Assembly: GCA_002269645.1 (NCBI GenBank)
Contig: NIVC01001780.1
Span: 1-64,000 of the forward strand
DNA length: 64,000 nt
Reading direction: 5' to 3'
Origin: Macrostomum lignano
Taxonomy: Eukaryota
Part shown: positions 4,781 to 63,974 of the stretch, one piece after another
Layout of the letters: each line of letters starts with the position of its first letter
Numbering within the stretch: position 1 is the stretch's first letter
Position numbers and translations under genes: made by a program
The notes under the pieces: generated by a model
What the model was told of the DNA's origin: nothing
Seen by the model: only the letters and a program-made list of their open reading frames with translations
Databases searched by the model: none

Positions 4781-5306
4781 GCTGTGGCACCTCATCAATG
4801 GCGCTTTGTGCTCAAATGCAGTTTATTTATAAATTTATTAATAATTTTGCATTTTGTACTCACGGTTTATTTTGCTAATCTTTATACACAGTTCAGGTGT
4901 GCATTTTGTAATCCACCTTTGATAATCTTTGGATTTATTTATCCGGTGCAACAGACTGACCCTGCTTCTACTCGCCCCGACCCTAGCCATCCAAGCAGCT
5001 CCAGACCAGCCGAGCTCAATGCCTAGAGGACAATGGCGAAGCTGAGGTTTAAGGGCCGAGCCGGCAGCCTGCGAACGCGTGTCAAAAGAAGACTCGCTGC
5101 AAATGCTTTTTTAGGAGGGGGGGGGGGTTGATGGCTGCCTAAAAGCGGCACAGAGACAAGATGCGTGAGCGCTAACCCTGCCCCGCTCAAACAATTCACT
5201 GCTTTGCATTGCGCTTGTGCTCTCAGCAAAAATTTACTGCCTTTGATATTCGGCACTTCGTGTTTTCAGATGCGAGCCTCCCACTCATATTGGGCGTTTA
5301 GAATTA

Positions 5307-12975: not shown

Positions 12976-15296
12976 CTAATAAAGACTTGTTTTCTCTAGT
13001 TTCTAGAAAGCTAAATAGGCTAAAAGTGCAGCTGGCCGGCAGCCCAGCCTCCGCCCGTCATCTCTGAGCACAAAAGCGAAGGTGCAGTGAGGGGAAGGCA
13101 GGGTGCTCAAGCACAATGCAGAGTCTCCATTGTGCAAGGCTGGGGCTGAAAATCATTCGGGAGCAGCCGCCAGTGCAGCCTCAGACAGCTCAGGTTTGCG
13201 CTGCTCATCTCTGCAGCCTCAGACAGCTCAGGTTTGCGCTGCTCATCTCTGCAGCCTCAGACAGCTCAGGTTTGCGCTGCTCATCTCTGCAGCCTCATCG
13301 CTAATTAAATCTCGCTTTTGCAATGACCTTGATTCTCAGTGCCCCTGATATGTCATGCTGTCAAGAGCTGCATTTTCTGAACAGCTGCTGTGTACTGCTG
13401 GGATTCGACAGCTCAGCCCCATCTCATTCTGCATCATTTAGAGCTGCTAGCCTCCTCTCTGCAGAGGCCCTGAGCAGCTCATTGTGCCACCGTACTGACC
13501 GCCTTTGGCTCTCATGAGATGCTGAATTTCTTGGCAACTCCTTTGCACCTCATCTTCTCAGCTGCCCGCTTCGGACTGCCTCAGGCTTGGGGTGGGCGCT
13601 CAGCCTCGAGTCTCTCAGCATCTCCGCAAAGCACTGCTCACTGGCCTCTCAGCTCTTGGGTGGTCTGACTTTCACCTGCATGCACAAGCTCTGTTTATCA
13701 GCCACCTGAAAGAGACAGGCTGGGATGAAGGGTGAGGGGCAGGGAGAGAGACAGGCTGGGATGAAGGGTGAGGGGCAGGGAGGGAGACAGGCTGGGATGT
13801 AGGGTGAGGGGCAGGGAGGGAGACAGGCTGGGATGTAGGGTGAGGGTCAGGAAGGGAGACAGGCTGGGATGTAGGGTGAGGGGCAGGGAGGGAGACAGGC
13901 TGGGATGCAGGGTGAGGGGCAGGGTTGGTCGCCGGCCCATGGGAGGGGCCAATATCGATACTGCATGGTTGGACACCCACAAAAACTCCAAGAAACATGA
14001 AAAAGCGCATAAAACCCGGTACGGCAGCTGCCAGCAATCTCTATGCATCGCTTCTTTGGCTCTCGCGGATATGCGAGTATAATCTGCCAATCTAAAAATA
14101 TTTTTAATCTCCGCAAACAATATCGCTTACAGTAAGCTACTCATAAGACTGGTGCGGCAAGCATATCCTTGTTGTAAAAGAGAATACCCGTATAGCATAT
14201 TGGGAAAATGTATTGCCAACTGCTCATCAAGGAGTCACCAAGCAACAATCAATCCGAATTGGTTTGCGATGTGAAGTTTTTCAGTGGCGATAAAACTGTA
14301 ATAAATAGTAATTTATTAGTTAGAAAACTTTCGAATAATCACAGGGTAAAAAACTGAACGAAAAGAAAAAATATTATAAGAAAAAAAGTTCACATTAATT
14401 AAGTAAGGTTAAACAAATCAACTTGAGTAGACATGGGAGCCGATTAACAATTAGATTAAAGTGCACTTGAGCAGAAGGGGCCAAAAATTAACGTAATTGA
14501 GAATGGTAAAGCAGATCCACTTTAGTAAGCATCGGAGCCGAATACCTGCTACCAGCATACGGTGGGTTTGAGCTGAAGGCCATGGAAACACAGCAGTCAA
14601 GAGAAGCAAAATGTGTTCAGTATTGTAGCGCAAAATGGAGAACAAAACTTGAATAAACAATTCAGAACAGCTCATAAATCTGTTTTCTCTCTGATAAATT
14701 GAAAATCTTACGAGGAATGTAAAATTTAGAAAGCATGTAAAATTGTTGTCCGCATCAAAATATACCGAAAAAATTATTTATATCATAAAGCATAATAGAG
14801 GTCAAATCTGGATAGGCACTGCACACAATAAAACAATTGGGCTGCAGGTACAGGTAAAGTTCGGCTGCTTGAGTTAACTGGAGAGCAGAATTTCAACAGC
14901 AAGAAAGATAGTGTGTCAAAACCAAAACCATCTATATAAAAAACTAAACAAACTAAAAAAATCTAAAAAAACAAACAAACATACATATGTTTCAAATATT
15001 ATACACTCAGCAACATGTAAAAGTTTCCACCCCGAAACCAGTGGCCAAATTTTCTCAGATCTCAGCCCCAAACAACGAAATTTATCTCAATTGAGGGTGA
15101 TGCAATTTTGGTCACAAGGTCGCAGCTGAGGCAGGTCAGGAGAGAGTGGAGAGTCATGGCTAGAGGCTAGATTGAAGCTGCCACTGTCAGTTCTCAGTCC
15201 CCATGAGCTTGTTTCGGTGTGGAAACTCACATGCTGCTTGGGTGTACACTCGTAAAAGTGTCACAAAAACCGCTAAACAATTTCATTGAGCAGCCT

Positions 15297-16698
15297 CTAA
15301 GCTTTCCGAGCTCTTTCTGGATCGAAGCTAACAAGGCGTGAAAGCTGGTCGACTTTTTGCGGTACACTGGGATACTGGCAGCCTTGAATCTGAACAGGAT
15401 TTTCCTGCAAGTGGCGGTTCACCTTGGTCATGATGTGACTGACGTCGAGCTGACGGAAGTACTTCTCGATGAACTTGCAAACAGTCTGCACGTACACCGA
15501 ACCCGAGTCGATGTTTCTAAAGGCGGCTGAGCCTTCAGTGGTGGCGTAGCAGAGCAGAAAGTCGCCATCTGCAGGACGGATCGCGGAGTTGAACACCGGC
15601 GGAGCGGCTGCCTCGTCTGTTTGCTCACGAGATTTGGCAGCATCAGCTCGGTCGCGACGTGTGCCACGACAGGCCTGGATGAAGAACAATTTCGGCTTTC
15701 CTTCAAGGCTGCGGCAGACAGGGCTCTGTGATGCAATGGTAGTTGCAGTGGAGTCTTCAGCCTTAGAAACTAAGCACAGTTTAGCCTAGACTTTTGTATG
15801 TGTGAAAAACATGTCAAGATCACCTTTTGATACAACATTACATGTTTCTATTTTAGAGAATTTTTAAATCCCTGTTATTGCCTATATCTTGCTTATCTTG
15901 GGCGTATATAGATAGTTAGGCTCACCTTGAACTTTCCTGCCAGCTCTCGAATTTTGTAGGGAAAACCGTCCCTACCGTAGATGCAGTCGTGGCTGCCGTG
16001 CGCCATCAAGAAGCAGACGAAGCTGCCGTGCTTGGCAAGGTCCCGTGACTTTTTAATCTCATTGAGGAAATCATCCACCTCTTCGACAGTGAAGTCCTCT
16101 TTTATCTCGACGATGAAGCGCAGCCTCTTGAATACCTGCTTCACTCGGTGAACATCACGATCCGAACCTTGACGCTCTGCAAGATTGAATGTGATGTCAC
16201 TTCCCGTGTCGTACTTGCTGATGTTGAGGATCAGACAGTAGCCTTGCGGGTCCGTCACTGGAAAGAAATCCTCTTCGTGCCTGGAATGCAGAAGATTCTG
16301 AAAATGGTTTTATACTGTTACAGCACACGAAATCACCAATTCACAAGAATTATGAATTGAGCACCTTGACGGTTGATTTCGAACTGCTTTATCGCGCGTG
16401 GCCCCTTTTGTACTTCTGAAAATTTTTAAATGAGACAAAAGAACGAATTCAATTGCCCAATATAATGAGTAAATATTAATATAAAGTGTTTCTACATCAA
16501 AAGCTTTAACTTGCATGGCTCCTTTAGTAAAGTTTCAAAATTTTTAAAATTGACATTAGAACAAATTCAATTGCACAATTCAATAGGTGAATATTCGTAA
16601 CTAGTTTCTAAATAACACACAATCAAAAAATCACTCACGAACAACGTTCATCATCACTCGGTTCCTCGTTATGAGCATGGTCCGTCACAACTCTTCGC
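15297..16698 (-). CDS. Caspase (peptidase C14A) catalytic region; exons 16698-16639, 16415-16365, 16280-15926, 15725-15297
   Basis: p20 contains PQGYCLILN...FVCFLMAHG (catalytic His), then CRSLEGKPKLFFIQACRG (catalytic Cys). p10 contains ADGDFLLCYATTEGSAAFRNIDSGSVYVQTVC. GT-AG junctions are phase-consistent and the stop TAG is at 15297-15299. Confidence 0.95.
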
Positions 16699-19600
16699 CT
16701 GTAAAAATTAAAAACGCGATATAAAGTTTTCTGAGCTCAGTGTGCTGTAGCTGTGTGTGCTGTAGCTGTGTGTGCTGTAGCTGTGTGTGCTGTAGCTGTG
16801 TGTGCTGTAGCTGTGTGCTGTAGCTGTGTGTGCTGTAGCTGTGTGCTGTAGCTGTGTGTGCTGTAGCTGTGTGTGCTGTAGCTGTGTGCTGTAGCTGTGT
16901 GTGCTGTAGCTGTGTGCTGTAGCTGTGTGTGCTGTAGCTGTGTGCTGTAGCTGTATGTGCAGTAGCTGTGTGTGCTGTAGCTGTGTGTGCTGTAGCTGTG
17001 TATGCTGTAGCTGTGTGCTGTAGCTGTGTGTGCTGTAGCTGTGTGTGCTGTAGCTGTGTGTTCTGTAGCTGTGTGTGCTGTAGCTGTGTGTGCTGTAGCT
17101 GTGTGCTGTAGCTGTGTGTGCTGTAGCTGTGTGCTGTAGCTGTGTGTGCTGTAGCTGTGTGCTGTAGCTGTATGTGCAGTAGCTGTGTGTGCTGTAGCTG
17201 TGTGTGCTGTAGCTGTGTATGCTGTAGCTGTGTGCTGTAGCTGTGTGTGCTGTAGCTGTGTGCTGTAGCTGTGTGTGCTGTAGCTGTGTGCTGTAGCTGT
17301 GTGTGCTGTAGCTGTGTGCTGTAGCTGTGTGTGCAGTAGCTGTGTGCTGTAGCTGTGTGCTGTAGCTGTGTATGCTGTAGCTGTGTGTGCTGTAGCTGTG
17401 TGTGCTGTAGCTGTGTGTGCTAAGCTGTGTGTGCTGTAGCTGTGTGTGCTGTAGCTGTGTGCTGTAGCTGTGTGTGCTGTAGCTGTGTGTGCTGTAGCTG
17501 TGTGTGCTGTAGCTGTGTGCTGTAGCTGTGTGCTGTAGCTGTGTGCTGTAGCTGTGTGTGCTGTAGCTGTGTGTGCTGTAGCTGTGTGTGCTGTAGCTGT
17601 GTATGCTGTAGCTGTGTGCTGTAGCTGTGTGTGCTGTAGCTGTGTGTGCTGTAGCTGTGTGTGCTGTAGCTGTGTGTGCTGTAGCTGTGTGTGCTGTAGC
17701 TGTGTGTGCTGTAGTTGTGTGCTGTAGCTGTGTGTGCTGTAGCTGTGTGTGCTGTAGCTGTGTGCTGTAGCTGTGTGTGCTGTAGCTGTGTGTGCTGTAG
17801 CTGTGTGTGCTGTAGCTGTGTGTGCTGTAGCTGTGTGTGCTGTAGCTGTGTGTGCTGTAGCTGTGTGCTGTAGCTGTGTGTGCTGTAGCTGTGTGCTGTA
17901 GCTGTGTGTGCTGTAGCTGTGTGCTGTAGCTGTATGTGCAGTAGCTGTGTGTGCTGTAGCTGTGTGTGCTGTAGCTGTGTATGCTGTAGCTGTGTGCTGT
18001 AGCTGTGTGTGCTGTAGCTGTGTGTGCTGTAGTTGTGTGCTGTAGCTGTGTGTGCTGTAGCTGTGTGTGCTGTAGCTGTGTGTGCTGTAGCTGTGTGTGC
18101 TGTAGCTGTGTATGCTGTAGCTGTGTGCTGTAGCTGTGTGTGCTGTAGCTGTGTGTGCTGTAGCTGTGTGTGCTGTAGCTGTGTGTGCTGTAGCTGTGTG
18201 TGCTGTAGCTGTGTGTGCTGTAGCTGTGTGTGCTGTAGCTGTGTGTGCTGTAGCTTGTGTGCTGTAGCTGTGTGTGCTGTAGCTGTGTGTGCTGTAGCTG
18301 TGTGCTGTAGCTGTGTGTGCTGTAGCTGTGTGTGCTGTAGCTGTGTGTGCTGTAGCTGTGTGCTGTAGCTGTGTGTGCTGTAGCTGTGTGCTGTAGCTGT
18401 ATGTGCAGTAGCTGTGTGTGCTGTAGCTGTGTGTGCTGTAGCTGTGTGTGCTGTAGTTGTGTGCTGTAGCTGTGTGTGCTGTAGCTGTGTGTGCTGTAGC
18501 TGTGTGCTGTAGCTGTGTGTGCTGTAGCTGTGTGTGCTGTAGCTGTGTGTGCTGTAGCTGTGTGTGCTGTAGCTGTGTGTGCTGTAGCTGTGTGTGCTGT
18601 AGCTGTGTGCTGTAGCTGTGTGTGCTGTAGCTGTGTGCTGTAGCTGTGTGTGCTGTAGCTGTGTGCTGTAGCTGTGTGTGCTGTAGCTGTGTGCTGTAGC
18701 TGTGTGCTGTAGCTGTGTGCTGTAGCTGTGTGCTGTAGCTGTGTGTGCTGTAGCTGTGTGTGCTGTAGCTGTGTGTGCTGTAGCTGTGTGTGCTAGCTGT
18801 GTGTGCTGTAGCTGTGTGTGCTGTAGCTGTGTGCTGTAGCTGTGTGTGCTGTAGCTGTGTGTGCTGTAGCTGTGTGTGCTGTAGCTGTGTGCTGTAGCTG
18901 TGTGCTGTAGCTGTGTGCTGTAGCTGTGTGTGCTGTAGCTGTGTGTGCTGTAGCTGTGTGTGCTGTAGCTGTGTATGCTGTAGCTGTGTGCTGTAGCTGT
19001 GTGTGCTGTAGCTGTGTGTGCTGTAGCTGTGTGTGCTGTAGCTGTGTGTGCTGTAGCTGTGTGTGCTGTAGCTGTGTGTGCTGTAGCTGTGTGTGTGTAG
19101 CTGTGTGTGCTGTAGCTGTGTGTGCTGTAGCTGTGTGTGCTGTAGCTGTGTGTGTAGCTGTGTCTGTGTAGCTGTGTTGCTGTAGCTGTGTGTGCTGTAG
19201 CTGTGTGTGCTGTAGCTGTGTGTGCTGTAGCTGTGTGCTGTAGCTGTGTGTGCTGTAGCTGTGTGTGCTGTAGCTGTGTGTGCTGTAGCTGTGTGCTGTA
19301 GCTGTGTGTGCTGTAGCTGTGTGTGCTGTAGCTGTGTATGCTGTAGCTGTGTGCTGTAGCTGTGTGTGCTGTAGCTGTGTATGCTGTAGCTGTGTGCTGT
19401 AGCTGTGTGTGCTGTAGCTGTGTGTGCTGTAGCTTGTGTGCTGTAGCTGTGTGTGCTGTAGCTGTGTGTGCTGTAGCTGTGTGTGCTGTAGCTGTGTGCT
19501 GTAGCTGTGTTGCTGTAGCTGTGTGCTGTAGCTGTGTGTGCTGTAGCTGTGTGTGCTGTAGCTGTGTGTGCTGTAGCTGTGTGCTGTAGCTGTGTGCTGT

Positions 19601-22600
19601 AGCTGTGTGCTGTAGCTGTGTGTGCTGTAGCTGTGTGCTGTAGCTGTGTGTGCTGTAGCTGTGTGTGCTGTAGCTGTGTGCTGTAGCTGTGTGTGCTGTA
19701 GCTGTGTGTGCTGTAGCTGTGTGCTGTAGCTGTGTGTGCTGTAGCTGTGTGTGCTGTAGCTGTGTGTGCTGTAGCTGTGTGTGCTGTAGCTGTGTGTGCT
19801 GTAGCTGTGTGTGCTGTAGCTGTGTGCTGTAGCTGTGTGTGCTGTAGCTGTGTGTGCTGTAGCTGTGTGCTGTAGCTGTGTGTGCTGTAGCTGTGTGTGC
19901 TGTAGCTGTGTGCTGTAGCTGTGTGTGCTGTAGCTGTGTGTGTTGTAACTGTGTCTGATGTAGCTGTGTTTGCTGTAGCTGTGTGTGCTGTAGCTGTGTG
20001 TGCTGTAGCTGTGTGCTGTAGCTGTGTGCTGTAGCTGTGTGTGCTGTAGCTGTGTGCTGTAGCTGTGTGCTGTAGCTGTGTGTGCTGTAGCTGTGTGTGC
20101 TGTAGCTGTGTGTGCTGTAGCTGTGTGTGCTGTAGCTGTGTGTGCTGTAGCTGTGTGCTGTAGCTGTGTGTGTTGCTGTGCTGTGTAGCTGTGTGCTGTA
20201 GCTGTGTGTGCTGTAGCTGTGTGTGCTGTAGCTGTGTGTGCTGTAGCTGTGTGCTGTAGCTGTGTGTGCTGTAGCTGTGTGCTGTAGCTGTGTGTGCTGT
20301 AGCTGTGTGTGCTGTAGCTGTGTGTGCTGTAGCTGTGTATGCTGTAGCTGTGTGCTGTAGCTGTGTGTGCTGTAGCTGTGTGCTGTAGCTGTGTGCTGTA
20401 GCTGTGTGTGCTGTAGCTGTGTGCTGTAGCTGTGTGTGCTGTAGCTGTGTGTGCTGTAGCTGTGTGTGCTGTAGCTGTGTGTGCTGTAGCTGTGTGCTGT
20501 AGCTGTGTGTGCTGTAGCTGTGTGTGCTGTAGCTGTGTGTGCTGTAGCCTTGTGTGCTGTAGCTGTGTGTGCTGTAGCTGTGTGTGCTGTAGCTGTGTGT
20601 GCTGTAGCTGTGTGCTGTAGCTGTGTGTGCTGTAGCTGTGTGCTGTAGCTGTGTGTGCTGTAGCTGTGTGTGCTGTAGCTGTGTGCTGTAGCTGTGTGCT
20701 GTAGCTGTGTGCTGTAGCTGTGTGTGCTGTAGCTGTGTGCTGTAGCTGTGTGTGCTGTAGCTGTGTGTGCAGCTGTGTGTGCTGTAGCTGTGTTGCTGTA
20801 GCTGTGTGTGCTGTAGCTGTGTGTGCTGTAGCTGTGTGTGCTGTAGCTGTGTGCTGTAGCTGTGTGTGCTGTAGCTGTGTATGCTGTAGCTGTGTATGCT
20901 GTAGCTGTGTGCTGTAGCTGTGTGTGCTGTAGCTGTGTGCTGTAGCTGTGTGTGCTGTAGCTGTGTGTGCTGTAGCTGTGTGTGCTGTAGCTGTGTGTGC
21001 TGTAGCTGTGTGTGCTGTAGCTGTGTGCTGTAGCTGTGTGTGCTGTAGCTGTGTGCTGTAGCTGTGTGTGCTGTAGCTGTGTGTGTGTAGCTGTGTCTGA
21101 TGTAGCTGTGTGCTGTAGCTGTGTGTGCTGTAGCTGTGTGTGCTGTAGCTGTGTGCTGTAGCTGTGTGCTGTAGCTGTGTGTGCTGTAGCCTTGTGTGCT
21201 GTAGCTGTGTATGCTGTAGCTGTGTGCTGTAGCTGTGTGTGCTGTAGCTGTGTGTGCTGTAGCTGTGTGCTGTAGCTGTGTGTGCTGTAGCTGTGTGCTG
21301 TAGCTGTGTGTGCTGTAGCTGTGTGTGCTGTAGCTGTGTGTGCTGTAGCTGTGTGCTGTAGCTGTGTGTGCTGTAGCTGTGTGTGCTGTAGCTGTGTGTG
21401 CTGTAGCTTGTGTGCTGTAGCTGTGTGCTGTAGCTGTGTGCTGTAGCTGTGTGTGCTGTAGCTGTGTGTGCTGTAGCTGTGTGTGCTGTAGCCTTGTGTG
21501 CTGTAGCTGTGTATGCTGTAGCTGTGTGCTGTAGCTGTGTGTGCTGTAGCTGTGTGCTGTAGCTGTGTGCTGTAGCTGTGTGTGCTGTAGCTGTGTGCTG
21601 TAGCTGTGTGTGCTGTAGCTGTGTGTGCTGTAGCTGTGTGTGCTGTAGCTGTGTGTGCTGTAGCTGTGTGCTGTAGCTGTGTGTGCTGTAGCTGTGTGTG
21701 CTGTAGCTGTGTGTGCTGTAGCTGTGTGCTGTAGCTGTGTGTGCTGTAGCTGTGTGCTGTAGCTGTGTGCTGTAGCTGTGTGTGCTGTAGCTGTGTGCTG
21801 TAGCTGTGTGTGCTGTAGCTGTGTGTGCTGTAGCTGTGTGCTGTAGCTGTGTGCTGTAGCTGTGTGTGCTGTAGCTGTGTGCTGTAGCTGTGTGCTGTAG
21901 CTGTGTGCTGTAGCTGTGTGTGCTGTAGTTGTGTGCTGTAGCTGTGTGTGCTGTAGCTGTGTGCTGTAGCTGTGTGTGCTGTAGCTGTGTGTGCTGAGCT
22001 GTGTGTGCCGTAGCTTTGTGTGCTGTAGCTGTGTGTGCAGAAGCTGTGTGTGCTGTAGCTGTGTGTGCTGTAGCTGTGTGTGCTGTAGCTGTGTGCTGTA
22101 GCTGTGTGCTGTAGCTGTGTGTGCTGTAGCTGTGTGCTGTAGCTGTGTGTGCTGTAGCTGTGTGTGCTGTAGCTGTGTGTGCTGTAGCTGTGTGTGTAGT
22201 AGCTGTGTGTGCTGTAACTGTGTGTGCTGTAGCTGTGTGTGCTGTAGCTGTGTGTGCTGTAGCTGTGTGTGCTGAGCTGTGTGTGCCGTAGCTTTGTGTG
22301 CTGTAGCTGTGTGTGCAGAAGCTGTGTGTGCTGTAGCTGTGTGTGCTGTAGCTGTGTGTGCTGTAGCTGTGTGCTGTAGCTGTGTGCTGTAGCTGTGTGT
22401 GCTGTAGCTGTGTGCTGTAGCTGTGTGTGCTGTAGCTGTGTGTGCTGTAGCTGTGTGTGCTGTAGCTGTGTGTGTAGTAGCTGTGTGTGCTGTAACTGTG
22501 TGTGCTGTAGCTGTGTGTGCTGTAGCTGTGTGTGTTGTAACTGTGTGTGCTGTAGCTGTGTGCTGTAGCTGTGTGTGCTGTAGCCTTGTGTGCTGTAGCT

Positions 22601-25600
22601 GTGTATGCTGTAGCTGTGTGCTGTAGCTGTGTGTGCTGTAGCTGTGTATGCTGTAGCTGTGTGCTGTAGCTGTGTGTGCTGTAGCTGTGTGCTGTAGCTG
22701 TGTGTGCTGTAGCTGTGTGTGCTGTAGCTGTGTGTGCTGTAGCTGTGTATGCTGTAGCTGTGTGCTGTAGCTGTGTGTGCTGTAGCTGTGTGTGCTGTAG
22801 CCTTGTGTGCTGTAGCTGTGTGTTCTGTAGCTGTGTGTGCTGTAGCTGTGTGTGCTGTAGCCTTGTGTGCTGTAGCTGTGTATGCTGTAGCTGTGTGCTG
22901 TAGCTGTGTGTGCTGTAGCTGTGTGTGCTGTAGCTGTGTGTGCTGTAGCTGTGTGCTGTAGCTGTGTGTGCTGTAGCTGTGTGTGCTGTAGCTGTGTGCT
23001 GTAGCTGTGTGTGCTGTAGCTGTGTGCTGTAGCTGTATGTGCAGTAGCTGTAAGTGCTGTAGCTGTGTGTGCTGAGCTGTGTGTGCCTTAGCTTTGTGTG
23101 CTGTAGCTGTGTGTGCAGAAGCTGTGTGTGCTGTAGCTGTGTGTGCTGTAGCTGTGTGTGCTGTAGCTGTGTATGCTGTAGCTTTGTGCTGTAGCTGTGT
23201 GTGCTGTAGCTGTGTGCAGTAGCTGTGTGTGCTGTAGCTGTGTGTGCTGTAGCTGTGTGTGCTGTAGCTGTGTGTGCAGTAGCTGTGTGTGCTGTAGCTG
23301 TGTGTGTTGTAACTGTGTATGATGTAGCTGTGTGTGCTGTAGCTGTGTGTGTTGTAACTGTGTATGATGTAGCTGTGTGTGCTGTAGCTGTGTTTGCTGT
23401 AGCTGTGTGTGCTGTAGCTGTGTGTGCTGTAGCTGTGTGTGTTGTAGCTGTGTATGATGTAGCTGTGTTTGCTGTAGCTGTGTTTGCTGTAGCTGTGTGT
23501 GCTGTAGCTGTGTGTGCTGTAGCTGTGTGTGCTGTAGCTGTGTGCTGTAGCTGTGTGTGCTGTAGCTGTGTGTGCTGTAGCTGTGTGTGCTGTAGCTGTG
23601 TGTGCTGTAGCTGTGTGTGCTGTAGCTGTGTGCTGTAGCTGTGTGTGCTGTAGCTGTGTGCTGTAGCTGTGTGCTGTAGCTGTGTGCTGTAGCTGTGTGT
23701 GCTGTAGCTGTGTGTACTGTAGCTCTGTGCTGTAGCTGTGTGTGCTGTAGCTGTGTGCTGTAGCTGTGTGTGCTGTAGCTGTGTGTGCTGTAGCTGTGTG
23801 TGCTGTAGCTGTGGGCTGTAGCTGTGTGTGCTGTAGCTGTGTGTGCTGTAGCTGTGTGCTGTAGCTGTATGCTGTAGCTGTATGCTGTAGCTGTTTGCTG
23901 TAGCTGTGTGGGCTGAATGAACTCACGCCAGTGCCAGATGCTCGTCGAAGTAAATCTTGTACGTGTACATACCCTCTGGTAAATAAGAAGCCCCTGCAAG
24001 TTGAGCTTTGGGTGGCGCTATATGGACATTGGGGGCGCGATCGGGAGATTGCGGCGCCACGAAGAGATTGGAGGCTCTCAAATCATTCAAGTGGCAATAT
24101 TTTGAACATCACATCAAGTACATTCCTACTAAAATCGGAGAGTTTGATGGCACTTGAACTCGCTGATGCTTTGTGTTGAAAACTCCTGCAGATTGAGATG
24201 TAGGTGGGGGCGCCATGAGGAGATTGGGGGCGCCATGGGGAGATTGGGGGCGCCATAGGGAGGTCGGGGGCGCCATGGGGAGGTCGGGGGCGCCATGGGG
24301 AGGTTGGAGGCACCATGGGGAGGTTGGAGGCGTCATGGGGAGGTTGGGGGCGCCATGAGGAGCTGCACTGACATTCATGACGCCCTCGCTTGACTGCGGC
24401 GCTGCTGAGAATTTCAGGGCGCCGATCATCAAAGCGCAATGAATTTTCGCCAAACAATATTTTCAGTATTTTCAGTGTCAGGCAGCAGCTCTCAGTCAGG
24501 ACTCACCCAGCTGAGGCGGCAGTCGGCGCTGAGCTGGCAGCGGGAGGCCGAGAGGCTTCGAGCCGCCGCTGCGTGGAGGAAATCCAGTCCCGCTTTGCTG
24601 ACACGTCTGTGAAGCACCGCCAAATCTCAACAACATCAGCCGGTGTTTGGCCACAGTTGTTCTTCAAGCTGAACATTTCGGCTCCGATTTGGTCAAAAAT
24701 GAACTGAAGAGAGTCGACTGGCTGATGCTGAGCGGCCAAATGGACGGCCGTGTTACCCTCTTTGTCAGGAACTGTGAGACAGTCGCTTCCGAGCTCCTTC
24801 ACCAGCCACTTCAGATTTGAATTGTCAGACTTCTCAGCAGCAAAGTGAAATGCTGTTCTATCCCACCATCCTCCCTTCAGCCGAAAGCAGTCAGTTCCGA
24901 TCTGTCTCTTGATCCACTCCAGCGACTCGATGCCCTGATGCTCAGCGGCCAAATGGACGGCCGTGGTACCGCAATTGTCAGGAACTGTGAGACAGTGGCT
25001 GCCGAGCTCCTTCACCAGCCACTTCAGATTTGAATTGTCAGACTTCTTAGCAGCAAAGTGAAATGCTGTTATATTACTCTCTGTCTTCAGCCGAAAGCAG
25101 TCAGTTCCGATCTGTCTCTTGATCCACTCCAGCGACTCGATGCCCTGATGCTCAGCGGCCAAATGGACGGCCGTGTAACCGCAATTGTCAGGAACTGTGA
25201 GACAGTGGCTGCCGAGCTCCTTCACCAGCCACTTCAGCATTGAATTGTCAGACTTCTGAGCAGCAATGTGAAATGCTCTCTGTCCCTTCAGCCGAAAGCA
25301 GTCAGTACCGATCTGTCTCTTGATCCACTCCAGCGACTCGATGCCCTGATGCTCAGAGGCCCAATGGACGGCCGTGTAACCGTAATTGTCAGGAACTGTG
25401 AGACAGTCGCTGCCGAGCTCCTTCACCAGCCACTTCAGATTTGAATTGTCAGACTTCTTAGCAGCAAAGTGAAATGCTGTTCTATCACCATCTCCCTTCA
25501 GCCGAAAGCAGTCAGTTCCGATCTGTCTCTTGATCCACTCCAGCGACTCGATGCCCTGATGCTGAGCGGCCAAATGGACGGCCGTGGTACCGTCTTCGTC

Positions 25601-26932
25601 AGGAACTGTGAGACAGTGGCTGCCGAGCTCCTTCACCAGCCACTTCAGCATTGAATTGTCAGACTTCTGAGCAGCAATGTGAAATGCCGTTCTATCACCA
25701 TCTCCCTTCAGCCGAAAGCAGTCAGTTCCGATCTGTCTCTTGATCCACTCCAGCGACTCGATGCCCTGATGCTCAGCGGCCAAATGGACGGCCGTGTCAC
25801 CGTATTCGCCAGGAACTGTGAGACAGTCGCTGCCGAGCTCCTTCACCAGCCACTTCAGATTTGAATTGTCAGACTTCTTAGCAGCAAAGTGAAATGCTGT
25901 TCTATCACCATCTCCCTTCAGCCGAAAGCAGTCAGTTCCGATCTGTCTCTTGATCCACTCCAGCGACTCGATGCCCTGATGCTCAGCGGCCAAATGGACG
26001 GCCGTGTTACCGTAACTGTCAGGAACTGTGAGACAGTCGTTGCCGAGCTCCTTCACCAGCCACTTCAGATTTGAATTGTCAGACTTTTTAGCAGCAAAGT
26101 GAAATGCTGTTCTATCGAGCCTTCCTTTCAGCCGAAAGCAGTCAGTTCCGATCTGTCTCTTGATCCACTCCAGCGACTCGATGCTCTGATGCTGAGCGGC
26201 CAAATGGACGGCCGTGTTCCCGTATTTGTAAGGAACTGTGAGACAGTCGTTGCCGAGCTCCTTCACCAGCCACTTCAGATTTGAATTGTCAGACTTCTTA
26301 GCAGCAAAGTGAAATGCTGTTCTATCACCATCTCCCTTCAGCCGAAAGCAGTCAGTTCCGATCTGTCTCTTGATCCACTCCAGCGACTCGATGCCCTGAT
26401 GCTGAGCGGCCAAATGGACGGCCGTGGTACCGTCTTCGTCAGGAACTGTGAGACAGTCGCTGCCGAGCTCCTTCACCAGCCACTTCAGACAAGAGTTGCT
26501 TTTTCTGTTCATAGCGGCAAAGTGAGCGACTGTCTCTCCATTTTTAGCGGCAATTCTCAAGCAGCCTCTGCCTACCTTCTTTTTAACCAGCTCAATCCAA
26601 GACTCGTCCTGATGCTGGGCAGCCAAGTGCACTGGAGTCTCGTACGTATCATTTCCAAGTGTCAGACAGTCGGGTCCGAATCTGTCAATCAGCAGCTCCA
26701 GGCACGACGAGCTCACCGGCTTGCAGGCAACGTGATGGGCCAGCGGCATGCGAAGCTCTTCCAAGGGAAAGTCGGGAAAGTCTTGCTTGTCGAAGCCGCC
26801 CACCTCCAGCCAGATGTTGCTGCCGACCTCACCGCACAGTCGCTGCAGCTCCTCGCTGTCTCCAGCCTCCAGCGCCGCCCTCAGCTTCCACTCCATCTCT
26901 GTTGCCATGGCTACACTCCCAGTGTTCCCCAT
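15297..26932 (-). CDS. Predicted ankyrin-caspase fusion gene (~1147 aa): exons 26932-24507, 24185-24130, 23993-23927, 16698-16639, 16415-16365, 16280-15926, 15725-15297
   Basis: All junctions are GT-AG with matching phases, and the summed CDS is 3444 nt with no internal stop. The 24185-24130 linker exon is the least certain; 24404-24373 is an alternative with the same phases. Confidence 0.7.
16739..23914. repeat. ~7.2-kb 15/13-bp satellite (GCTGTAGCTGTGT[GT])n inside a predicted intron of the ANK-caspase gene
   Basis: Uninterrupted tandem array; it explains the 2168-aa HTQLQ/HTATA/HSYST ORF. Confidence 0.98.
24205..24360. repeat. 20-bp repeat (GGGGCGCCATGGGGAGGTYG)
   Basis: About 8 imperfect copies, intronic. 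Confidence 0.85.
24507..26932 (-). CDS. Ankyrin-repeat exon (~21 ANK repeats, 210-bp two-repeat unit); probable N-terminal part of the caspase gene
   Basis: Long open frame with repeated DxxGxTAVHLAA / DRTAFHFAA motifs. It ends at a GG|gtgagt donor (24506-24501) whose TGA is the apparent ORF stop. The first in-frame ATG is at 26932 (MGNTGS); the frame stays open to 27073. Confidence 0.9.
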
Positions 26933-27535
26933 GCCGGCTTCTCCTAGCAGCGCTTCTCTGCCGATCTGCTGTCTGCCGCAGCTGTTCCACACGGCTTCAA
27001 ACTGAGTGCTTTGCTCTTCTTCAAGCGAATTTGCCTGCCAGCTCAGCAGCAGCAGCAAAAGTCCGGCTGTCACGGACTGAAATCTCTGAGCTCTCCTGTG
27101 CAGAGAAATTTGTTTAAATGGACTGAGGCCGATTCTCTTCTCTGACCCAGCGGCTGTGTTTGAGGCCTGATTGGGTGCCAGGGGGTCCGGCAGCTGCTCT
27201 GCTCAGCGGGGTGAGAGATGCAGGAGCAGTGAGATGCTGCGAGCTCTGCTGAGTTAAACAATGAGAGCTGACTGTGGCTGCGTGCTCGGCATAGCAAGTG
27301 CATTGTCAGTGGGCAGGGGTGAAGGGGCGGCAGCTGAGACACGAGGGGAGAGAGATGGAGAGGGGGGGAGGGCAGGGCTGAGGCCTGGAAACCAAGCGGA
27401 GCGCTCTGACGATTTTCAATTCAGTTTGCAATTGTATGGCAAATATTTTGCAGAAAAATGCTTATAACTGAGGATTTTCTGTTGCTGAACTCGAAACAGA
27501 TGGAGAATGGTCGCTTGGGTTTGCCAGCGACAATT

Positions 27536-28038
27536 TACATCAGTATCTAACAGGTGACATCAGTATCTAACAGGTGACATCGGTATCTAACATGTGACAT
27601 CATTATCTAACAGGTGACACGAGTATTTAACAGGTGACACCAGTATCTAACCGGTGACATCAGTATCTAACAGGTGACACCATTATCTAACGGGTGACAT
27701 CAGTATCTAACAGGTGACACCAGTATCTAACGGGTGACATCAGTATCTAACAGGTGACACCAGTATCTAACAGGTGACACCAGTATCTAACAGGTGACAC
27801 CAGTATCTAACGGGTGACATCGGTATCTAACGGGTGACACCAGTATCTAACAGGTGACACCAGTATCTAACAGGTGACACCAGTATCTAACGGGTGACAT
27901 CGGTATCTAACAGAAGACACCAGTATCTAACAGGTGACACCAGTATCTAAAAGGTGACACCAGTATCTAACAGAAGACACCAGTATCTAAAAGGTGACAC
28001 CAGTATCTAACAGGTGACATCAGTATCTAACAGGTGAC
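27536..28038. repeat. 20-bp minisatellite (CAGTATCTAACAGGTGACAY)n
   Basis: About 25 copies; same unit as at 1-505. Confidence 0.95.
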
Positions 28039-30861: not shown

Positions 30862-31951
30862 ATAATTAATCTCTAGAAGATAAATCAAGACGTCAATTTG
30901 GTAAGTGCATGGACCTCTTAAAAGTTCAGGTTTTAACTAGATACATTGACATGTAAATGTTTTCTAGGGGTAACTTTCATGGCATCTCAGAAGTCCACCC
31001 ATGGGACTTGACGTATTGGCGATTCCCCCCAGGAGGCGTTTATGGTTGAGAGGTCAAATACAAGCGTATTCTATGGTAAAACTGATGTTAACACTGTCCC
31101 TAACCTTTTTGTTTGATATGACGCTTCTTTTATGTTAGAGGTGGCATGACATGGTCCATGAACATAAGCAGTGATTTAGTTGACTCTTTGTCACAGCTTT
31201 TCCTTAACAGAACTGTAACACTTTTGAGAGCATGGTCTTATTGTCGTTTGCTGCTTCACTAACACTGCTGATTAATTTGCTAATACATTTGCGTAATAAG
31301 TTTATTTTGAATGCTGTCATGTTCTCAACTTCAATCAATATACTAGTATTAATTATATTTATATTCTGACTAAGACATTCTCCGCAGTGAGTTTAGGGTG
31401 GGTGCAAAATTTGGTTTTGTAGAGTTTTCATTTTTATTGCTAGAGATTATAATATAGTTATCTAAACATTAGTATAAACAAAATTATATTTAAGAAAATC
31501 TTTTTTTTCGATTTCCAGTGCCCACTAGCTAAGTGCATCGATAATTATAATTAACCACGCAATTATTTAAACAAAAAAGAAGCAATTTTGAATTGCTCAA
31601 TCTTCTATGCCGAAATTTTTCTGCTAAATCACAGATTGCCGATTGCCGATTTGCGACTTGTTTTTATCGCTTCAAAGGTTTTCCTCCAGAATCTTCATAA
31701 TTTTAACTCCAATTAAATCTCCTCACCACGGTCTTCTTCCTAATTCCTAATGCCTGGCGTTTGAAAATTTTGCGCGGAGTTTTTCTCACTTATCATCGTT
31801 TTCTTCATCGGAGAAATTACGGTAATTATTTCTAAGAAAAGAAAAATAAATTTCTCGATCTTCGACCCACGATTTTCGAGGATGCTTTAATTCTCAATTT
31901 TTTTAATTTATTTGCGAGGGATGCGAAGCTTATTGCCACTTGGGGGTTGTC

Positions 31952-32157
31952 GAGGATGACAACGCGCCGCCACACCGAGCCGATGCTGTTAGTCAACTGA
32001 AAGAACAGCTACAGCTGCGCACTCTGCGCTGACCTTCCCGGTCCCCAGGCATAAATCACATCGAGCATGTCTGGGACTTCCTAAAAACGCAGAATTCGAA
32101 AAGAGAATCTACCACAGAATGTTGCGGAGCTGCGTCATGCCATTGAAAACGCATCCC
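31952..32157 (+). mobile_element. Tc1-family transposase pseudogene fragment (DD34E)
   Basis: Translates EDDNAPPHRA...R*PSRSPGINHIEHVWDFLK, matching the Tc1 DNAPxH...WPSxSPDLNPIEHVW motif with 34 residues between D and E. It has an in-frame stop and a frameshift and is cut by a satellite at ~32155. Confidence 0.8.
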
Positions 32158-33160
32158 AGATCTCAGATCCCAGATCTCAGATCCCAGATCTCAGATCCCA
32201 GATCTCAGATCCCAGATCTCAGATCCCAGATCTCAGATCCCAGATCTCAGATCCCAGATCTCAGATCCCAGATCTCAGATCCCAGATCTCAGATCCCAGA
32301 TCTCAGATCCCAGATCTCAGATCCCAGATCTCAGATCCCAGATCTCAGATCCCAGATCTCAGATCCCATTTGAGTAGTATCAGAATCCACAACTCCTATT
32401 TGAGCACTTTCAGAATCCTCAAATCCCATTTGAGCAGTATCAGAATCATCAAATCTCATTTGAGTAGTATCAGAATCCACAACTCCTAGTTGAGCAGTAT
32501 CAGAATCCTCAAATCCTATTTGAGCAGTATCAGAATCCTCAAATCCCACTTGAGCAGTATCAGAATCCACAACTCCTATTTGAGTAGTATCAGAATCATC
32601 AAATCCCATTTCAGTTGTATCAGAATTCAAATCCCATTTCAGTTGTATCAGAATTCAAATCCCATTTGAGTAGTATCAGAATCCCAAAATCCTATTGAGA
32701 AGTTTCCGTGGCGCTAGAAAAACCCTGTGGCGCAGGTGAGCTGCTCTGTTTCGTTAATCATCTGTCACAAATCTTTCAGATCTGGACTTTAAATGCCGCT
32801 AAGAGTCCTAATTTAACTAGTCCTGAAGTTCAGCCCTAAAAAGATTTAAAATATAGAATCCCAAATCCCGAATCCCAAAAATCAAAATCCCACATCTTAA
32901 ATCCCAAATCCCACATCCCAAATCCCACATCCCACATCCCAAATCCAAAATCTCAATCCCAAATCGTAAATTACAAATCTCAAATCCCAAATCCAAATCC
33001 CAAATCCCAAATCCCAAATTTCAAATCCCAAATCGCAAATCTCAAATCCTAAATCCCAAATCTCAAATCCCAAATTAAAAATCCCAAATTCTAAATCTCA
33101 AATCCCAAATCTCAAATCCAAAATCTCAAATCCAAAATCTCAAATCCCAAATCGCAAATC
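32155..33160. repeat. Satellite cluster: 14-bp (TCTCAGATCCCAGA)n 32155-32367; 30-bp unit ~32364-32690; (AAATCCC)n-like ~32855-33160
   Basis: Tandem units visible directly. Confidence 0.9.

Positions 33161-51544: not shown

Positions 51545-63974
<12,430 letters not shown>

What the first reader, a model, noticed from the sequence alone, without database searches (positions are those of the whole stretch)
24720..26520. ANK repeats are homogenised except at the DARPin-type binding positions
Seen: across the 210-bp units the helix-2/outer segments are nearly identical even at silent sites (e.g. CAGTTCCGATCTGTCTCTTGATCCACTCCAGCGACTCGATG). The beta-hairpin tips vary by amino-acid changes: DEDGT, YKYGN, DSYGN, GEYGD, DEDGT, DNYGY, DNCGY, DNCGT, DKEGN in type A. 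Type B shows GDGDRT, GRLDRT, GQR (3-aa deletion), TESNIT and GGWWDRT (1-aa insertion), plus AA[QE]H and AA[KQE]K. Established: these are the DxxGxT and AAxx positions randomised in designed ankyrin repeat proteins. Inference: diversifying selection on a recognition surface against concerted evolution of the scaffold, as expected for a variable pathogen sensor.
Basis: partly seen in the sequence, partly recalled or inferred. Interest (0 to 1): 0.76.

Follow-up and report, generated by a model that had tools for sequence, protein, structure and literature searches.

The report
Hypervariable ankyrin array on a flatworm caspase
A flatworm (Macrostomum lignano-type) gene carries about 22 ankyrin repeats whose framework is almost identical from copy to copy but whose target-binding loops differ strongly, and it appears to be spliced to a cell-death protease, so it looks like a fast-evolving recognition module wired to a death or signalling enzyme.

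Summary
Window 24722-26489 (- strand) holds 8.4 tandem 210-bp units, each encoding two 35-aa ankyrin (ANK) repeats, A and B. The framework differs by 2-3% at the nucleotide level (dS 0.03). Ten codons differ by 31%: the loop before helix 1 (ANK positions 1-5) and position 13.

The 12 DARPin-randomised positions hold 58% of amino-acid diversity (permutation p<5e-6), though positions 14 and 33 are fixed here.

Selection is supported, with a caveat. Non-synonymous change at the variable codons is 8-17 times the flanking synonymous rate (p<1e-7). Local dN/dS is only 1.5-1.6 in this array (P=0.10), but 2.0-2.6 across 36 units from six paralogues (P<0.01).

All relatives above 40% identity are from Macrostomum lignano. 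They form a young family with 3-13 units per gene, and a second subfamily varies at the same positions.

The reading frame's "stop" lies in a splice donor. A four-exon GT-AG model joins the array to an intact caspase-3/7-like domain, where the five sequenced paralogues carry STE-type kinases. No NOD domain is present.

"Pathogen sensor" is untested. The closest analogue is the highly conserved ANK repeats of fungal NLRs.

The parts
24507..26908 (-). Coding exon 1: 800 codons plus 2 bases, from MATEMEW... to ...TAASAG. It forms an all-ankyrin solenoid of about 22 repeats. The ATG at 26908 is chosen by homology to the paralogues' start.
   Evidence: The AlphaFold2 model has mean pLDDT 90.8 and pTM 0.70. 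The best Foldseek matches are the AnkB/AnkR 24-repeat domains, NOMPC and Espin.
26459..26908 (-). N-terminal cap plus degenerate, single-copy ANK repeats (residues 1-150). Their hairpins also differ between paralogues.
   Evidence: Non-synonymous changes cluster at ...LGNDT--YET... and ...AAKNGET....
24785..26458 (-). Eight complete 210-bp (70-aa) A+B di-repeat units. One is 201 bp and one is 213 bp because of hairpin indels. Units average 87% amino-acid and 93% nucleotide identity.
24507..24784 (-). Ninth A-type repeat (DKEGN), whose second half diverges, followed by the C-terminal cap repeat and a Pro/Ser/Ala tail. This cap region shows an excess of non-synonymous change between paralogues.
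   Evidence: Minimal-change N/S rate ratio 2.33, p=0.02.
26423..26440 (-). First A hairpin (DEDGTT). The other A hairpins lie at 26213-26230, 26003-26020, 25793-25810, 25583-25600, 25373-25390, 25172-25189, 24962-24979 and 24749-24766. The variable position 13 (Q/E) is the codon 19-21 nt downstream of each hairpin, for example 26402-26404.
26318..26335 (-). First B hairpin (GDGDRT). The other B hairpins lie at 26108-26125, 25898-25915, 25688-25705, 25478-25495, 25277-25285 (GQR, deletion), 25067-25084 (TESNIT) and 24854-24874 (GGWWDRT, insertion). The variable position 13 (K/Q/E) is, for example, 26297-26299.
24501..24506 (-). Splice donor GG|gtgagt (phase 2). The apparent stop codon TGA at 24503-24505 lies inside it. 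The 16 bases gtgagtcctgactgag are identical in paralogues L002-L005, where the donor joins kinase exons.
16740..23915 (.). A 7.2-kb 15-bp satellite (GTGTGCTGTAGCTGT)n filling most of the inferred intron 1. A 20-bp minisatellite at 24205-24362 lies just after the donor.
   Evidence: The public models P0121 and P0123 of paralogous caspases begin with a translation of the same satellite.
16639..16698 (-). Inferred 60-nt linker mini-exon of phase 2 to 2, encoding (G)RRVVTDHAHNEEPSDDERC(S). The acceptor is tttttacag| and the donor is |gtgagt. It has no in-frame ATG.
   Evidence: It is 72-82% identical to the N-terminal parts of P0121 and P0123.
15926..16280 (-). Caspase exon for the large subunit: HEEDFFPVTDPQGYC...FLMAHGSHD...GKFK. 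The acceptor ctgcattccag| (phase 2) is homologous to that of the ANK-caspase gene in L006.
15297..15725 (-). Caspase exon carrying the QACRG active site and the small subunit, ending at stop codon TAG (15297-15299).

Best explanation
The region is the core of the first coding exon of a lineage-specific flatworm gene. All relatives above 40% identity are from Macrostomum lignano.

Shown:
- The exon encodes an ankyrin solenoid of about 22 repeats. Its centre is a young tandem array of 70-aa A+B di-repeats.
- The array grows, shrinks and is kept uniform by unequal crossing-over or gene conversion. Paralogues carry 3, 3, 4, 5, 8 and 13 units, and gene-private framework variants have spread across units.
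- Amino-acid replacements and small indels accumulate at 8-17 times the local silent rate, almost only in the loop before helix 1 (ANK positions 1-5) and at position 13. These are the positions that contact ligands in natural ANK domains and that are randomised in DARPins.

Inferred:
- This reflects positive diversifying selection on a ligand-binding groove built on a fixed scaffold.
- The exon is spliced through a conserved phase-2 donor and a 60-nt acidic linker exon to a caspase-3/7-like protease with an intact His/Cys dyad. The five paralogues whose loci were sequenced here use the same donor to reach STE-group (SLK/MST/ASK1-like) kinase domains.
- The array is therefore a variable recognition pro-domain. 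Binding of a multivalent or oligomeric target would bring the effector domains together and activate them. Initiator caspases and MST/ASK-type kinases are both activated by induced proximity.

The nature of the ligand (pathogen or parasite, mobile element, or self protein) is unknown.
For: Array and variable positions:
- Array and hairpins.
- Family-wide entropy exceeds 1.8 bits only at A2, A3, A5, A13, B2, B3 and B13. It is 1.0-1.3 bits at B1, B4 and B5 and below 0.7 bits in the other 60 columns, across 43 units from 14 proteins (13 paralogues plus the window).
- The a-priori DARPin columns hold 58-61% of diversity, p<5e-6.
- The AlphaFold model puts the variable sites in the pre-helix-1 loop and the end of helix 1. 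Published surveys identify that face as the binding face (PMC8415598).

Selection:
- dN at the variable codons is 0.43 against a framework dS of 0.031.
- The minimal-change rate ratio is 8.4 (window), 16.8 (L003) and 5.0 (all units), with p from 4e-8 to 4e-10.
- Local pN/pS is 2.05-2.11 against neutral simulations, P<=0.007, in L003 and in all 36 units.
- Pairs of units with the same amino acid use different codons no more often at variable sites (3.3%) than at framework sites (2.4%).
- The synonymous third positions of the invariant Gly4 and Thr6 codons, which sit between variable codons, are as uniform as the framework. This argues against a regional mutation hotspot or conversion tracts that skip the hairpin.
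- The single-copy C-cap has an N/S ratio of 2.33, p=0.02.
- The independent subfamily L006 is variable at A3, A5, A13, A14, B2, B3, B10 and B13, with nucleotide distance 0.41 against 0.036.

Gene model:
- The donor is identical to that of the kinase paralogues, the acceptor is homologous to that of the L006 ANK-caspase, and all junctions are phase 2.
- The mini-exon is described.
- The four-exon model gives a 1081-codon open frame with GT-AG at all three introns.
- The caspase exon has an in-frame stop 12 codons upstream and no usable ATG.
- The caspase aligns to caspase-3 with QACRG and the catalytic His.
- Related caspases P0122 and P0124 carry other ANK pro-domains ending ...LLRG| before the HEEDF or DGDF junction.
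- ANK-caspases are a recognised platyhelminth clade (PMC11463336).
Against: - In this window's array alone, local dN/dS at the variable codons is 1.5-1.6 and not significant (P=0.10; MST ratio 1.16).
- Codon-position-3 diversity at the variable codons is also raised (0.23). Much of that is non-synonymous or part of multi-base changes.
- Recombination among units violates tree-based tests. My counts are heuristic, not PAML or HyPhy.
- No transcript evidence supports the exon 1-2-3 joins. Intron 1 would be 7.8 kb of satellite. The closest public caspase models (P0121-P0123) are annotated as short proteins.
- Activation by induced proximity, and any immune role, are pure inference.
- No population or allele data were available.
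Confidence: 0.6

Rival explanations
1. Relaxed constraint only. The array is a very recent tandem duplication in a genome that makes minisatellites everywhere. The framework is held by purifying selection for folding. The exposed loop residues are simply free to drift, so no positive selection and no special recognition role are needed.
For: - The window is packed with tandem arrays.
- Paralogues are young, with dS 0.04-0.10.
- Local dN/dS in this array is not significantly above 1.
- Framework omega is about 0.6-1.0.
Against: - Under neutrality, the variable codons should diverge no faster than neighbouring silent sites. They diverge 8-17 times faster and 14 times faster by NG86.
- Silent sites of the Gly4 and Thr6 codons, interleaved with the variable codons, are homogeneous.
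- Family-level pN/pS of 2.0-2.1 exceeds neutral simulations.
- The same structural positions vary in a second subfamily with a different scaffold.
- Replacements are radical (W, Y, R, D, K, G) and include in-frame indels.
Confidence: 0.12
2. Diversifying selection is real, but the targets are the worm's own proteins or gametes. On this view the ANK arrays are substrate- or partner-recruiting modules that direct each caspase or kinase paralogue to different endogenous clients, or they take part in sexual conflict or genetic conflict with selfish elements. They would not sense pathogens.
For: - ANK domains commonly act as adaptors, and the concave face is the usual binding site (PMC8415598).
- The family is a large paralogous expansion with several effector types.
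- There is no signal peptide, NOD, TIR or death domain to tie it to known immune pathways.
Against: - Nothing here discriminates between this and a pathogen-sensing role.
- Rapid turnover, copy-number change and hypervariable binding sites fused to a death protease are more typical of non-self recognition, as in fungal NLRs (PMC4986451).
Confidence: 0.2
3. The ANK exon is an orphan. A kinase-type gene lost its kinase exons when the 7-kb satellite expanded, and the downstream caspase is a separate gene with a short pro-domain. The array would then be a decaying relic.
For: - No kinase sequence is found anywhere in the window.
- The array's sequence is of the kinase-type subfamily, 80-87% identical to those paralogues.
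- P0121-P0123 are modelled as 300-321-aa caspases.
Against: - A 2.4-kb frame stays open through 8 near-identical units, where any slippage would shift it.
- The donor is intact and identical to functional paralogues.
- The mini-exon and caspase exon have no in-frame start and need an upstream phase-2 exon.
- P0121 and P0123 have no Met and start inside translated satellite, so they are truncated models.
- A relic would not keep the excess of replacements restricted to binding positions.
Confidence: 0.1
4. Assembly artefact: a collapsed or chimeric assembly of several paralogous arrays produces apparent unit-to-unit variation.
For: - Near-identical 210-bp units are hard to assemble.
- Public gene models of paralogues already mis-handle the arrays.
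Against: - Differences are codon-structured, in frame, and confined to specific positions.
- The same architecture appears in six independently assembled loci of GCA_002269645.1.
- The array contains no Ns and no frame breaks.
Confidence: 0.03

Closest known systems
[quoted passage not shown]
   Same: - Repeats are at least 85% identical over more than 100 aa.
- Repeat number varies between copies.
- Units are exchanged or spread within and between paralogues.
- Hypervariable, positively selected sites lie on the concave ANK face (inner helix plus hairpin loop).
- One repeat type combines modularly with different effector domains, including kinases.
   Different: - There is no NACHT or NB-ARC domain.
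- The organism is an animal, not a fungus.
- The effector is C-terminal and is a caspase or STE kinase.
- The duplicating unit is a 70-aa A+B di-repeat of 35-aa ANK repeats.
- No RIP-type mutagenesis is available.
- That paper found HIC repeats in only 0.8% of metazoan ANK, TPR and WD repeats.
Designed ankyrin repeat proteins (DARPins), which have a consensus scaffold with positions 2, 3, 5, 13, 14 and 33 randomised (Binz et al. 2003, from my own knowledge)
   Same: - The scaffold is fixed and diversity sits at positions 2, 3, 5 and 13. Position 14 also varies in the L006 subfamily.
- Sequence and fold match ANK consensus proteins and DARPins.
   Different: - This is natural, not designed.
- Positions 14 and 33 are invariant in this array.
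- The repeats are 35 aa, with an extra short helical turn after helix 2.
- Type B repeats also vary in hairpin length and at positions 1, 4, 5 and 10.
- There are about 22 repeats rather than 4-6.
[quoted passage not shown]
   Same: An ankyrin pro-domain lies N-terminal to a caspase domain, in a flatworm. Macrostomum lignano proteins P0005, P0026-P0028, P0124 and P0127 have this architecture.
   Different: - That paper describes ANK-caspases as typical of parasitic flatworms. For M. lignano it reports only a caspase with a kinase-like pro-domain.
- It does not report tandem homogenised arrays or hypervariable positions.
- The join here is inferred from splice phases, not from cDNA.
PRDM9 zinc-finger minisatellite arrays (from my own knowledge; one paper on PRDM9 surfaced)
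   Same: A coding minisatellite evolves by unequal exchange, with positive selection confined to the few ligand-contact residues of each repeat.
   Different: The fold is C2H2 zinc finger, the ligand is DNA, and it is a single gene rather than a family with swapped effectors.
ANK-plus-kinase proteins of animals: ILK and TNNI3K (ANK N-terminal to the kinase), and DAPK1 and RIPK4/ANKK1 (from my own knowledge; RIPK4 hits appear)
   Same: The paralogues combine an ANK array with a protein kinase domain.
   Different: The kinase here belongs to the STE group (closest are SLK, MST and ASK1). The arrays are long, homogenised and hypervariable. Similarity to RIPK4 lies only in generic ANK repeats (26% identity).

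Membership tests
Ankyrin repeat superfamily | Matches the ANK profile HMMs above the curated threshold | tested here: met
   Ank_2 scores 229.8 bits against a cut-off of 27.3. Ank_4, Ank_5, Ank and Ank_3 are all above their cut-offs.
Ankyrin repeat superfamily | Helix-turn-helix plus loop solenoid fold | tested here: met
   The AlphaFold2 model has pLDDT 90.8 and regular paired helices in every repeat. Foldseek matches the AnkB 24-repeat domain with E=1.2e-32, and Espin-AR with TM 0.70.
DARPin-like variability pattern | Diversity confined to positions 2, 3, 5, 13, 14 and 33 of each repeat | tested here: inconclusive
   Positions 2, 3, 5 and 13 are hypervariable in both repeat types. Positions 14 and 33 are invariant in this array. 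Additional variation occurs at B1, B4, B5, B10 and B19. Position 14 is variable in subfamily L006.
High-internal-conservation (HIC) repeat domain as defined in PMC4986451 | At least 85% identity between repeats over at least 100 aa | tested here: met
   The eight 70-aa units average 87% amino-acid identity (range 81-97%) over 558 aa.
High-internal-conservation (HIC) repeat domain as defined in PMC4986451 | Repeat-number variation between copies or alleles | tested here: met
   Paralogues carry 3, 3, 4, 5, 8 and 13 full units. Alleles were not available.
High-internal-conservation (HIC) repeat domain as defined in PMC4986451 | Positive diversifying selection at binding-surface codons | tested here: inconclusive
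   Against framework silent sites, the excess is 8-17-fold with p<1e-7. Local pN/pS is 1.48 in this array (P=0.10), 2.11 in L003 (P=0.003) and 2.05 in all units (P<0.007). HyPhy and PAML were not available.
NOD-like receptor / STAND | Central NACHT or NB-ARC nucleotide-binding domain | tested here: not met
   No such Pfam domain is found in the window protein or in six long family members. The precomputed Pfam lists show only ANK, kinase and caspase domains.
Platyhelminth ANK-caspase | ANK pro-domain and caspase domain in one polypeptide | tested here: inconclusive
   A four-exon GT-AG model gives one 1081-codon frame. Splice phases and the acceptor are homologous to the L006 ANK-caspase. No transcript evidence is available.
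Caspase (peptidase C14) | Catalytic His and the Cys of the QACxG pentapeptide | tested here: met
   FLMAHG and QACRG align to SHG and QACRG of human caspase-3, E=3.7e-38.
Immune or pathogen sensor | Binds a non-self ligand and signals on infection | not testable with these tools
   No ligand, expression or infection data are available.

The most novel reading that the evidence does not exclude
Macrostomum carries a germline-encoded, rapidly diversifying family of receptors that amount to natural DARPins. Each has a hypervariable ankyrin solenoid fused directly, without a NOD module, to an induced-proximity effector: a caspase or an STE kinase, exchanged by phase-2 exon shuffling. On this reading the family is an animal counterpart of fungal HIC-repeat NLRs. 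In flatworms it would replace the lost DED-caspase/FADD extrinsic death pathway with direct ligand-sensing initiator caspases.
Probability: 0.3. Interest if true: 0.85.

Novelty: new variant of a known kind. Interest (0 to 1): 0.66.

Why it matters
Flatworms have lost FADD and DED-caspases, and how they trigger cell death or recognise non-self is largely unknown (PMC11463336). A family in which a hypervariable ANK groove sits directly on a caspase or a stress-type kinase would offer a concrete, testable candidate for the receptor layer of flatworm immunity or conflict systems.

It would also extend the pattern of a homogenised scaffold with hypervariable contact residues from fungal NLRs, PRDM9 and VLRs to animal ankyrin proteins. 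That pattern is nature arriving at the DARPin library design.

There is a practical point too. Public gene models of this family collapse the arrays and break at satellite-filled introns, so the family's size and architecture are underestimated.

Tried and rejected
1. NLR reading. No NACHT or NB-ARC domain is found in the window protein or its relatives, so this was rejected.

2. Kinase exons in the window. tblastn with the P0001 and P0007 kinase domains found nothing at E<1e-3.

3. An ordinary ANK pro-domain exon upstream of the caspase, like that of P0122 or P0124. tblastn at E<=10 found only the junction residues.

4. A conservative count of minimal changes per codon, using a minimum spanning tree (MST) over the distinct codons in each column. 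The local N/S ratio is 1.2-1.9 and not significant. The method books synonymous-looking pairs such as AGG/CGG or GGA/GGG as silent steps, although they can arise by separate replacements from TGG or GAT, so it is biased against selection. I report it as a limit rather than discarding it.

5. NG86 dS measured at the variable codons themselves. It is inflated by multi-step path averaging, so I did not use it alone.

6. Hairpins as old sequence that escapes conversion. The silent sites of Gly4 and Thr6, 1-3 nt from the variable bases, are homogeneous. Conversion tracts cannot skip single codons.

7. Mapping variable sites onto 3-D coordinates. The structure tool returns only secondary structure and confidence, and no coordinate file was available. 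Mapping is therefore by secondary-structure element only.

8. Looking for the family outside M. lignano. An exhaustive HMMER search found nothing above about 36% identity in other taxa. Hits from sawflies, a mayfly and a bacterial metagenome-assembled genome are generic ANK proteins.

9. Literature. No paper linking Macrostomum ankyrin arrays to hypervariability was found.

Full report
**What is in the sequence**

The window is eukaryotic and rich in minisatellites. The flagged interval lies in an 856-codon open frame at 24503-27073 on the - strand. That frame scores as ankyrin (ANK) repeats only (Ank_2 E=3.6e-69).

Tandem Repeats Finder reports 8.4 copies of a 210-bp unit at 24722-26489, with 92% matches. 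Each unit encodes two 35-aa ANK repeats of different sequence:
- A: DCLTVP-DxxGxT-AVHLAAxHQGIESLEWIKRQIGT
- B: DCFRLK-GxxDRT-AFHFAAxKSDNSNLKWLVKELGS

**How uneven the variation is**

I aligned the units codon by codon. The differences concentrate in ANK positions A1-A3, A5 and A13, and in B1-B5 and B13. Minor variants occur at B10, B19, B29 and B30.

Nucleotide diversity at the ten variable codons is 0.45/0.27/0.23 for codon positions 1/2/3. In the other 60 codons it is about 0.03 at every position.

To avoid circularity I used the 12 DARPin library columns as an a-priori set (positions 2, 3, 5, 13, 14, 33, from my knowledge of Binz et al. 2003). They hold 58% of amino-acid heterozygosity, and none of 200,000 random 12-column draws reaches that value. 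Positions 14 and 33 are nevertheless invariant here, so the correspondence with DARPins is partial.

**Whose gene it is**

The best database matches are all Macrostomum lignano proteins, at 68-85% identity over the ANK part. Most carry a C-terminal protein kinase domain. A more distant set (about 40-50% identity) carries a caspase domain.

An exhaustive HMMER scan of 1.8 billion representatives, followed by a name look-up, shows that everything above about 40% identity is M. lignano. Weaker hits are generic ANK proteins of insects or bacteria. No family member I scanned has a NACHT or NB-ARC domain.

**The pattern is family-wide**

I collected 43 full units from 14 proteins (13 paralogues plus the window protein). 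Shannon entropy exceeds 1.8 bits only at A2, A3, A5, A13, B2, B3 and B13. It is 1.0-1.3 bits at B1, B4 and B5, and below 0.7 bits in the remaining 60 columns.

I then fetched the genomic DNA of five kinase-type paralogues and one ANK-caspase locus from assembly GCA_002269645.1. The genomic frames contain 3, 3, 4, 5 and 13 full units, against 8 in the window. The public model P0004 skips eight of the 13 units in its locus, so annotation underestimates the arrays.

The ANK-caspase subfamily (L006) has a different homogenised scaffold, about 48% identical. It is hypervariable at A3, A5, A13, A14, B2, B3, B10 and B13, with nucleotide distance 0.41 against 0.036 elsewhere. The same structural positions therefore vary on two different scaffolds.

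**Selection tests**

PAML and HyPhy were not available, so the tests below are my own counts and simulations.

| Test | Window array | L003 (13 units) | All 36 units |
|---|---|---|---|
| NG86 dN at variable codons | 0.43 | 0.58 | 0.57 |
| NG86 framework dS | 0.031 | 0.019 | 0.035 |
| Minimal-change rate: variable-codon non-synonymous / framework synonymous | 8.4 (p=4e-8) | 16.8 (p=2e-10) | 5.0 (p=4e-10) |
| Local NG86 dN/dS at variable codons | 1.6 | 2.6 | 2.5 |
| Local minimal-change ratio | 1.16 | 1.60 | 1.54 |
| Local pN/pS against neutral coalescent simulations | 1.48 (P=0.10) | 2.11 (P=0.003) | 2.05 (0 of 150) |

- The local minimal-change ratios are not significant. This count books synonymous-looking codon pairs as silent steps, which biases it against selection.
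- The neutral simulations were matched for nucleotide divergence and gave a median pN/pS of about 0.93.
- A hotspot or an "old hairpin" explanation fits poorly. Pairs of units with the same residue differ in codon no more often at variable sites (3.3%) than at framework sites (2.4%). The silent third positions of the invariant Gly4 and Thr6 codons, interleaved with the variable codons, are as uniform as the framework.
- In the single-copy parts of the exon, compared between paralogues at orthologous positions, dS is 0.04-0.10. Replacements cluster in the hairpins of the degenerate N-terminal repeats and in the C-cap. In the C-cap the N/S rate ratio is 2.33 (p=0.02), and pairwise omega reaches about 10.

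My reading is that diversifying selection on the hairpin and helix-1 positions is well supported for the family. For this array taken alone it is suggestive but not formally proven.

**Concerted evolution versus recent duplication**

Framework distance is 2.3% within genes and 3.1% between genes (permutation p=4e-4). The variable codons are as different within a gene (35%) as between genes (37%).

Gene-private framework variants have spread to several units. Examples are GGA (Gly) at column 31 in 6 of 13 L003 units, and CAC (His) at column 1 in 3 of 8 window units.

Together with the copy-number differences, this shows ongoing unequal exchange or unit duplication after the genes separated. The family is young overall, so "homogenised" partly means "recently duplicated".

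**Structure**

An AlphaFold2 model of the exon-1 protein (801 aa, built with a 26-sequence alignment) has mean pLDDT 90.8 and pTM 0.70.
- Each repeat shows an 8-residue loop, helix 1, helix 2 and an extra short helical turn. The extra turn accounts for the 35-aa length.
- A2, A3 and A5 lie in the loop, and A13 lies in the last turn of helix 1.
- The B variable sites lie in the equivalent loop and at the end of a shorter helix 1.
- Foldseek's best matches are the 24-repeat domains of ankyrin-B and ankyrin-R, NOMPC and Espin.
- A survey of 7,407 ANK repeats places most ligand contacts on this concave face, meaning the beta-turn/loop plus the first helix (PMC8415598).

**The gene does not end where the frame ends**

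The TGA at 24503-24505 sits inside GG|gtgagtcctgactgag. This string is identical to the phase-2 donor that joins the ANK exon to the kinase exons in L002-L005.

The window has no kinase sequence. Downstream on the same strand, the order is:
1. A 20-bp minisatellite and a 7.2-kb 15-bp satellite (16740-23915).
2. A 60-nt exon-like segment at 16698-16639, with acceptor tttttacag| and donor |gtgagt, of phase 2 to 2, encoding RRVVTDHAHNEEPSDDERC.
3. Two caspase exons at 16280-15926 and 15725-15297.

The first caspase exon starts at a phase-2 acceptor (ctgcattccag|G CAC GAA GAG...). This acceptor is homologous to that of the L006 ANK-caspase (ctgcattccag|A CTC CAT GAG...). The exon has an in-frame stop 12 codons upstream and no usable ATG.

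Joining the four pieces gives one 1081-codon frame with GT-AG at all three introns. The caspase is caspase-3/7-like, with the catalytic His (AHG) and QACRG.

Its closest relatives (78-81% identity) are short public models. Two of them begin, without a Met, inside a translation of the same satellite. Two others carry different ANK pro-domains ending ...LLRG| before the HEEDF or DGDF junction. The paralogues' kinase belongs to the STE group, closest to SLK, MST and ASK1.

I therefore infer, without transcript evidence, that this copy is an ANK-caspase, and that phase-2 exon shuffling has placed the same kind of ANK exon on different effectors.

**Comparison with what is known**

- ANK-caspases are a recognised platyhelminth clade. 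The paper describing them treats them as typical of parasitic species and notes only a kinase-pro-domain caspase in M. lignano. It does not describe homogenised or hypervariable arrays (PMC11463336).
[quoted passage not shown] These show at least 85% identity, repeat-number polymorphism, exchange within and between paralogues, and positive selection on the concave ANK face. In that study, such repeats made up only 0.8% of metazoan ANK, TPR and WD repeats (PMC4986451).
- The present family meets the HIC identity criterion, at a mean of 87%, and the copy-number criterion. It lacks the NOD module, so it works like those arrays but is not an NLR.
- I found no paper describing this family.

**Verdict**

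The inference of diversifying selection on a recognition surface is largely supported. "Pathogen sensor" remains a hypothesis.

The new points are the likely caspase (or, in paralogues, kinase) effector and the lineage-specific, NOD-less architecture. I rate this a new variant of a known kind, with interest 0.66.

Noticed in passing
window 16740-23915, also 24205-24362: A 7.2-kb satellite of a 15-bp unit (GTGTGCTGTAGCTGT, about 500 copies) fills the inferred first intron. A 20-bp minisatellite sits just after the splice donor. The same satellite is translated at the start of the public caspase models P0121 and P0123 (AHTATAH..., TQLQHT...), so paralogous loci share it and their gene models are truncated in it.
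   Followed up: partly
L003 2931-6460 (GCA_002269645.1 NIVC01000558.1); L001: Public gene models collapse the arrays. P0004 contains about 5 units but the genomic open frame has 13 full units. P0001 has a GDRT junction created by an annotated intron inside the array. Repeat numbers in this family are therefore underestimated in public annotation.
   Followed up: partly
window 26909-26932 (- strand): An in-frame ATG lies 8 codons upstream of the homology-supported start. It would add MGNTGSVA, and MGNTGS fits the N-myristoylation consensus MGxxxS/T. The paralogues L001 and L003 lack this ATG.
   Followed up: no
window 1-507, 2053-2274, 3115-3331, 27537-28038: The same 20-bp minisatellite unit (CAGTATCTAACAGGTGACAT) forms four separate arrays on both sides of the ANK gene. 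A 36-bp unit likewise recurs at 5305-6280 and 13712-13924. About 30 distinct tandem arrays with score above 300 lie in the 64 kb.
   Followed up: no
window 38496-39428 (-): An open frame with a reverse-transcriptase domain (RVT_1, E=1.4e-13). It is probably a retroelement fragment.
   Followed up: no
window 39867-40541 (-) and 47751-48512 (+): Open frames with a SAP domain (E=1.9e-9) and a DEK C-terminal domain (E=4.3e-12), on opposite strands. They are possibly parts of chromatin-protein genes.
   Followed up: no
window 60734-61591 (-): An open frame matching the fourth Ig-like domain of CFAP65 (E=4.8e-12). It is likely an exon of a ciliary protein gene.
   Followed up: no
L006 3-3728 and 12455-13728; contigs NIVC01000558.1 and NIVC01000085.1: Family members are clustered. 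Two ANK-caspase genes lie about 9 kb apart in L006. P0001 and P0004 lie about 60 kb apart on one contig, and P0003 and P0008 about 50 kb apart on another. L001 also carries a further 385-aa ANK gene on the opposite strand at 31072-33050.
   Followed up: no
L003 array (units at residues 313-453 and 804-944 of the open frame): There is a higher-order duplication inside the 13-unit array. The A-hairpin series SRGD, KYGT, ILGD recurs in the same order. The intervening B hairpins differ (GDDDRT/GLLDRT/GWLDKT against GDGERT/RDDDRT/RWLDKT), so the B hairpins changed or were exchanged after a three-unit block duplication.
   Followed up: no
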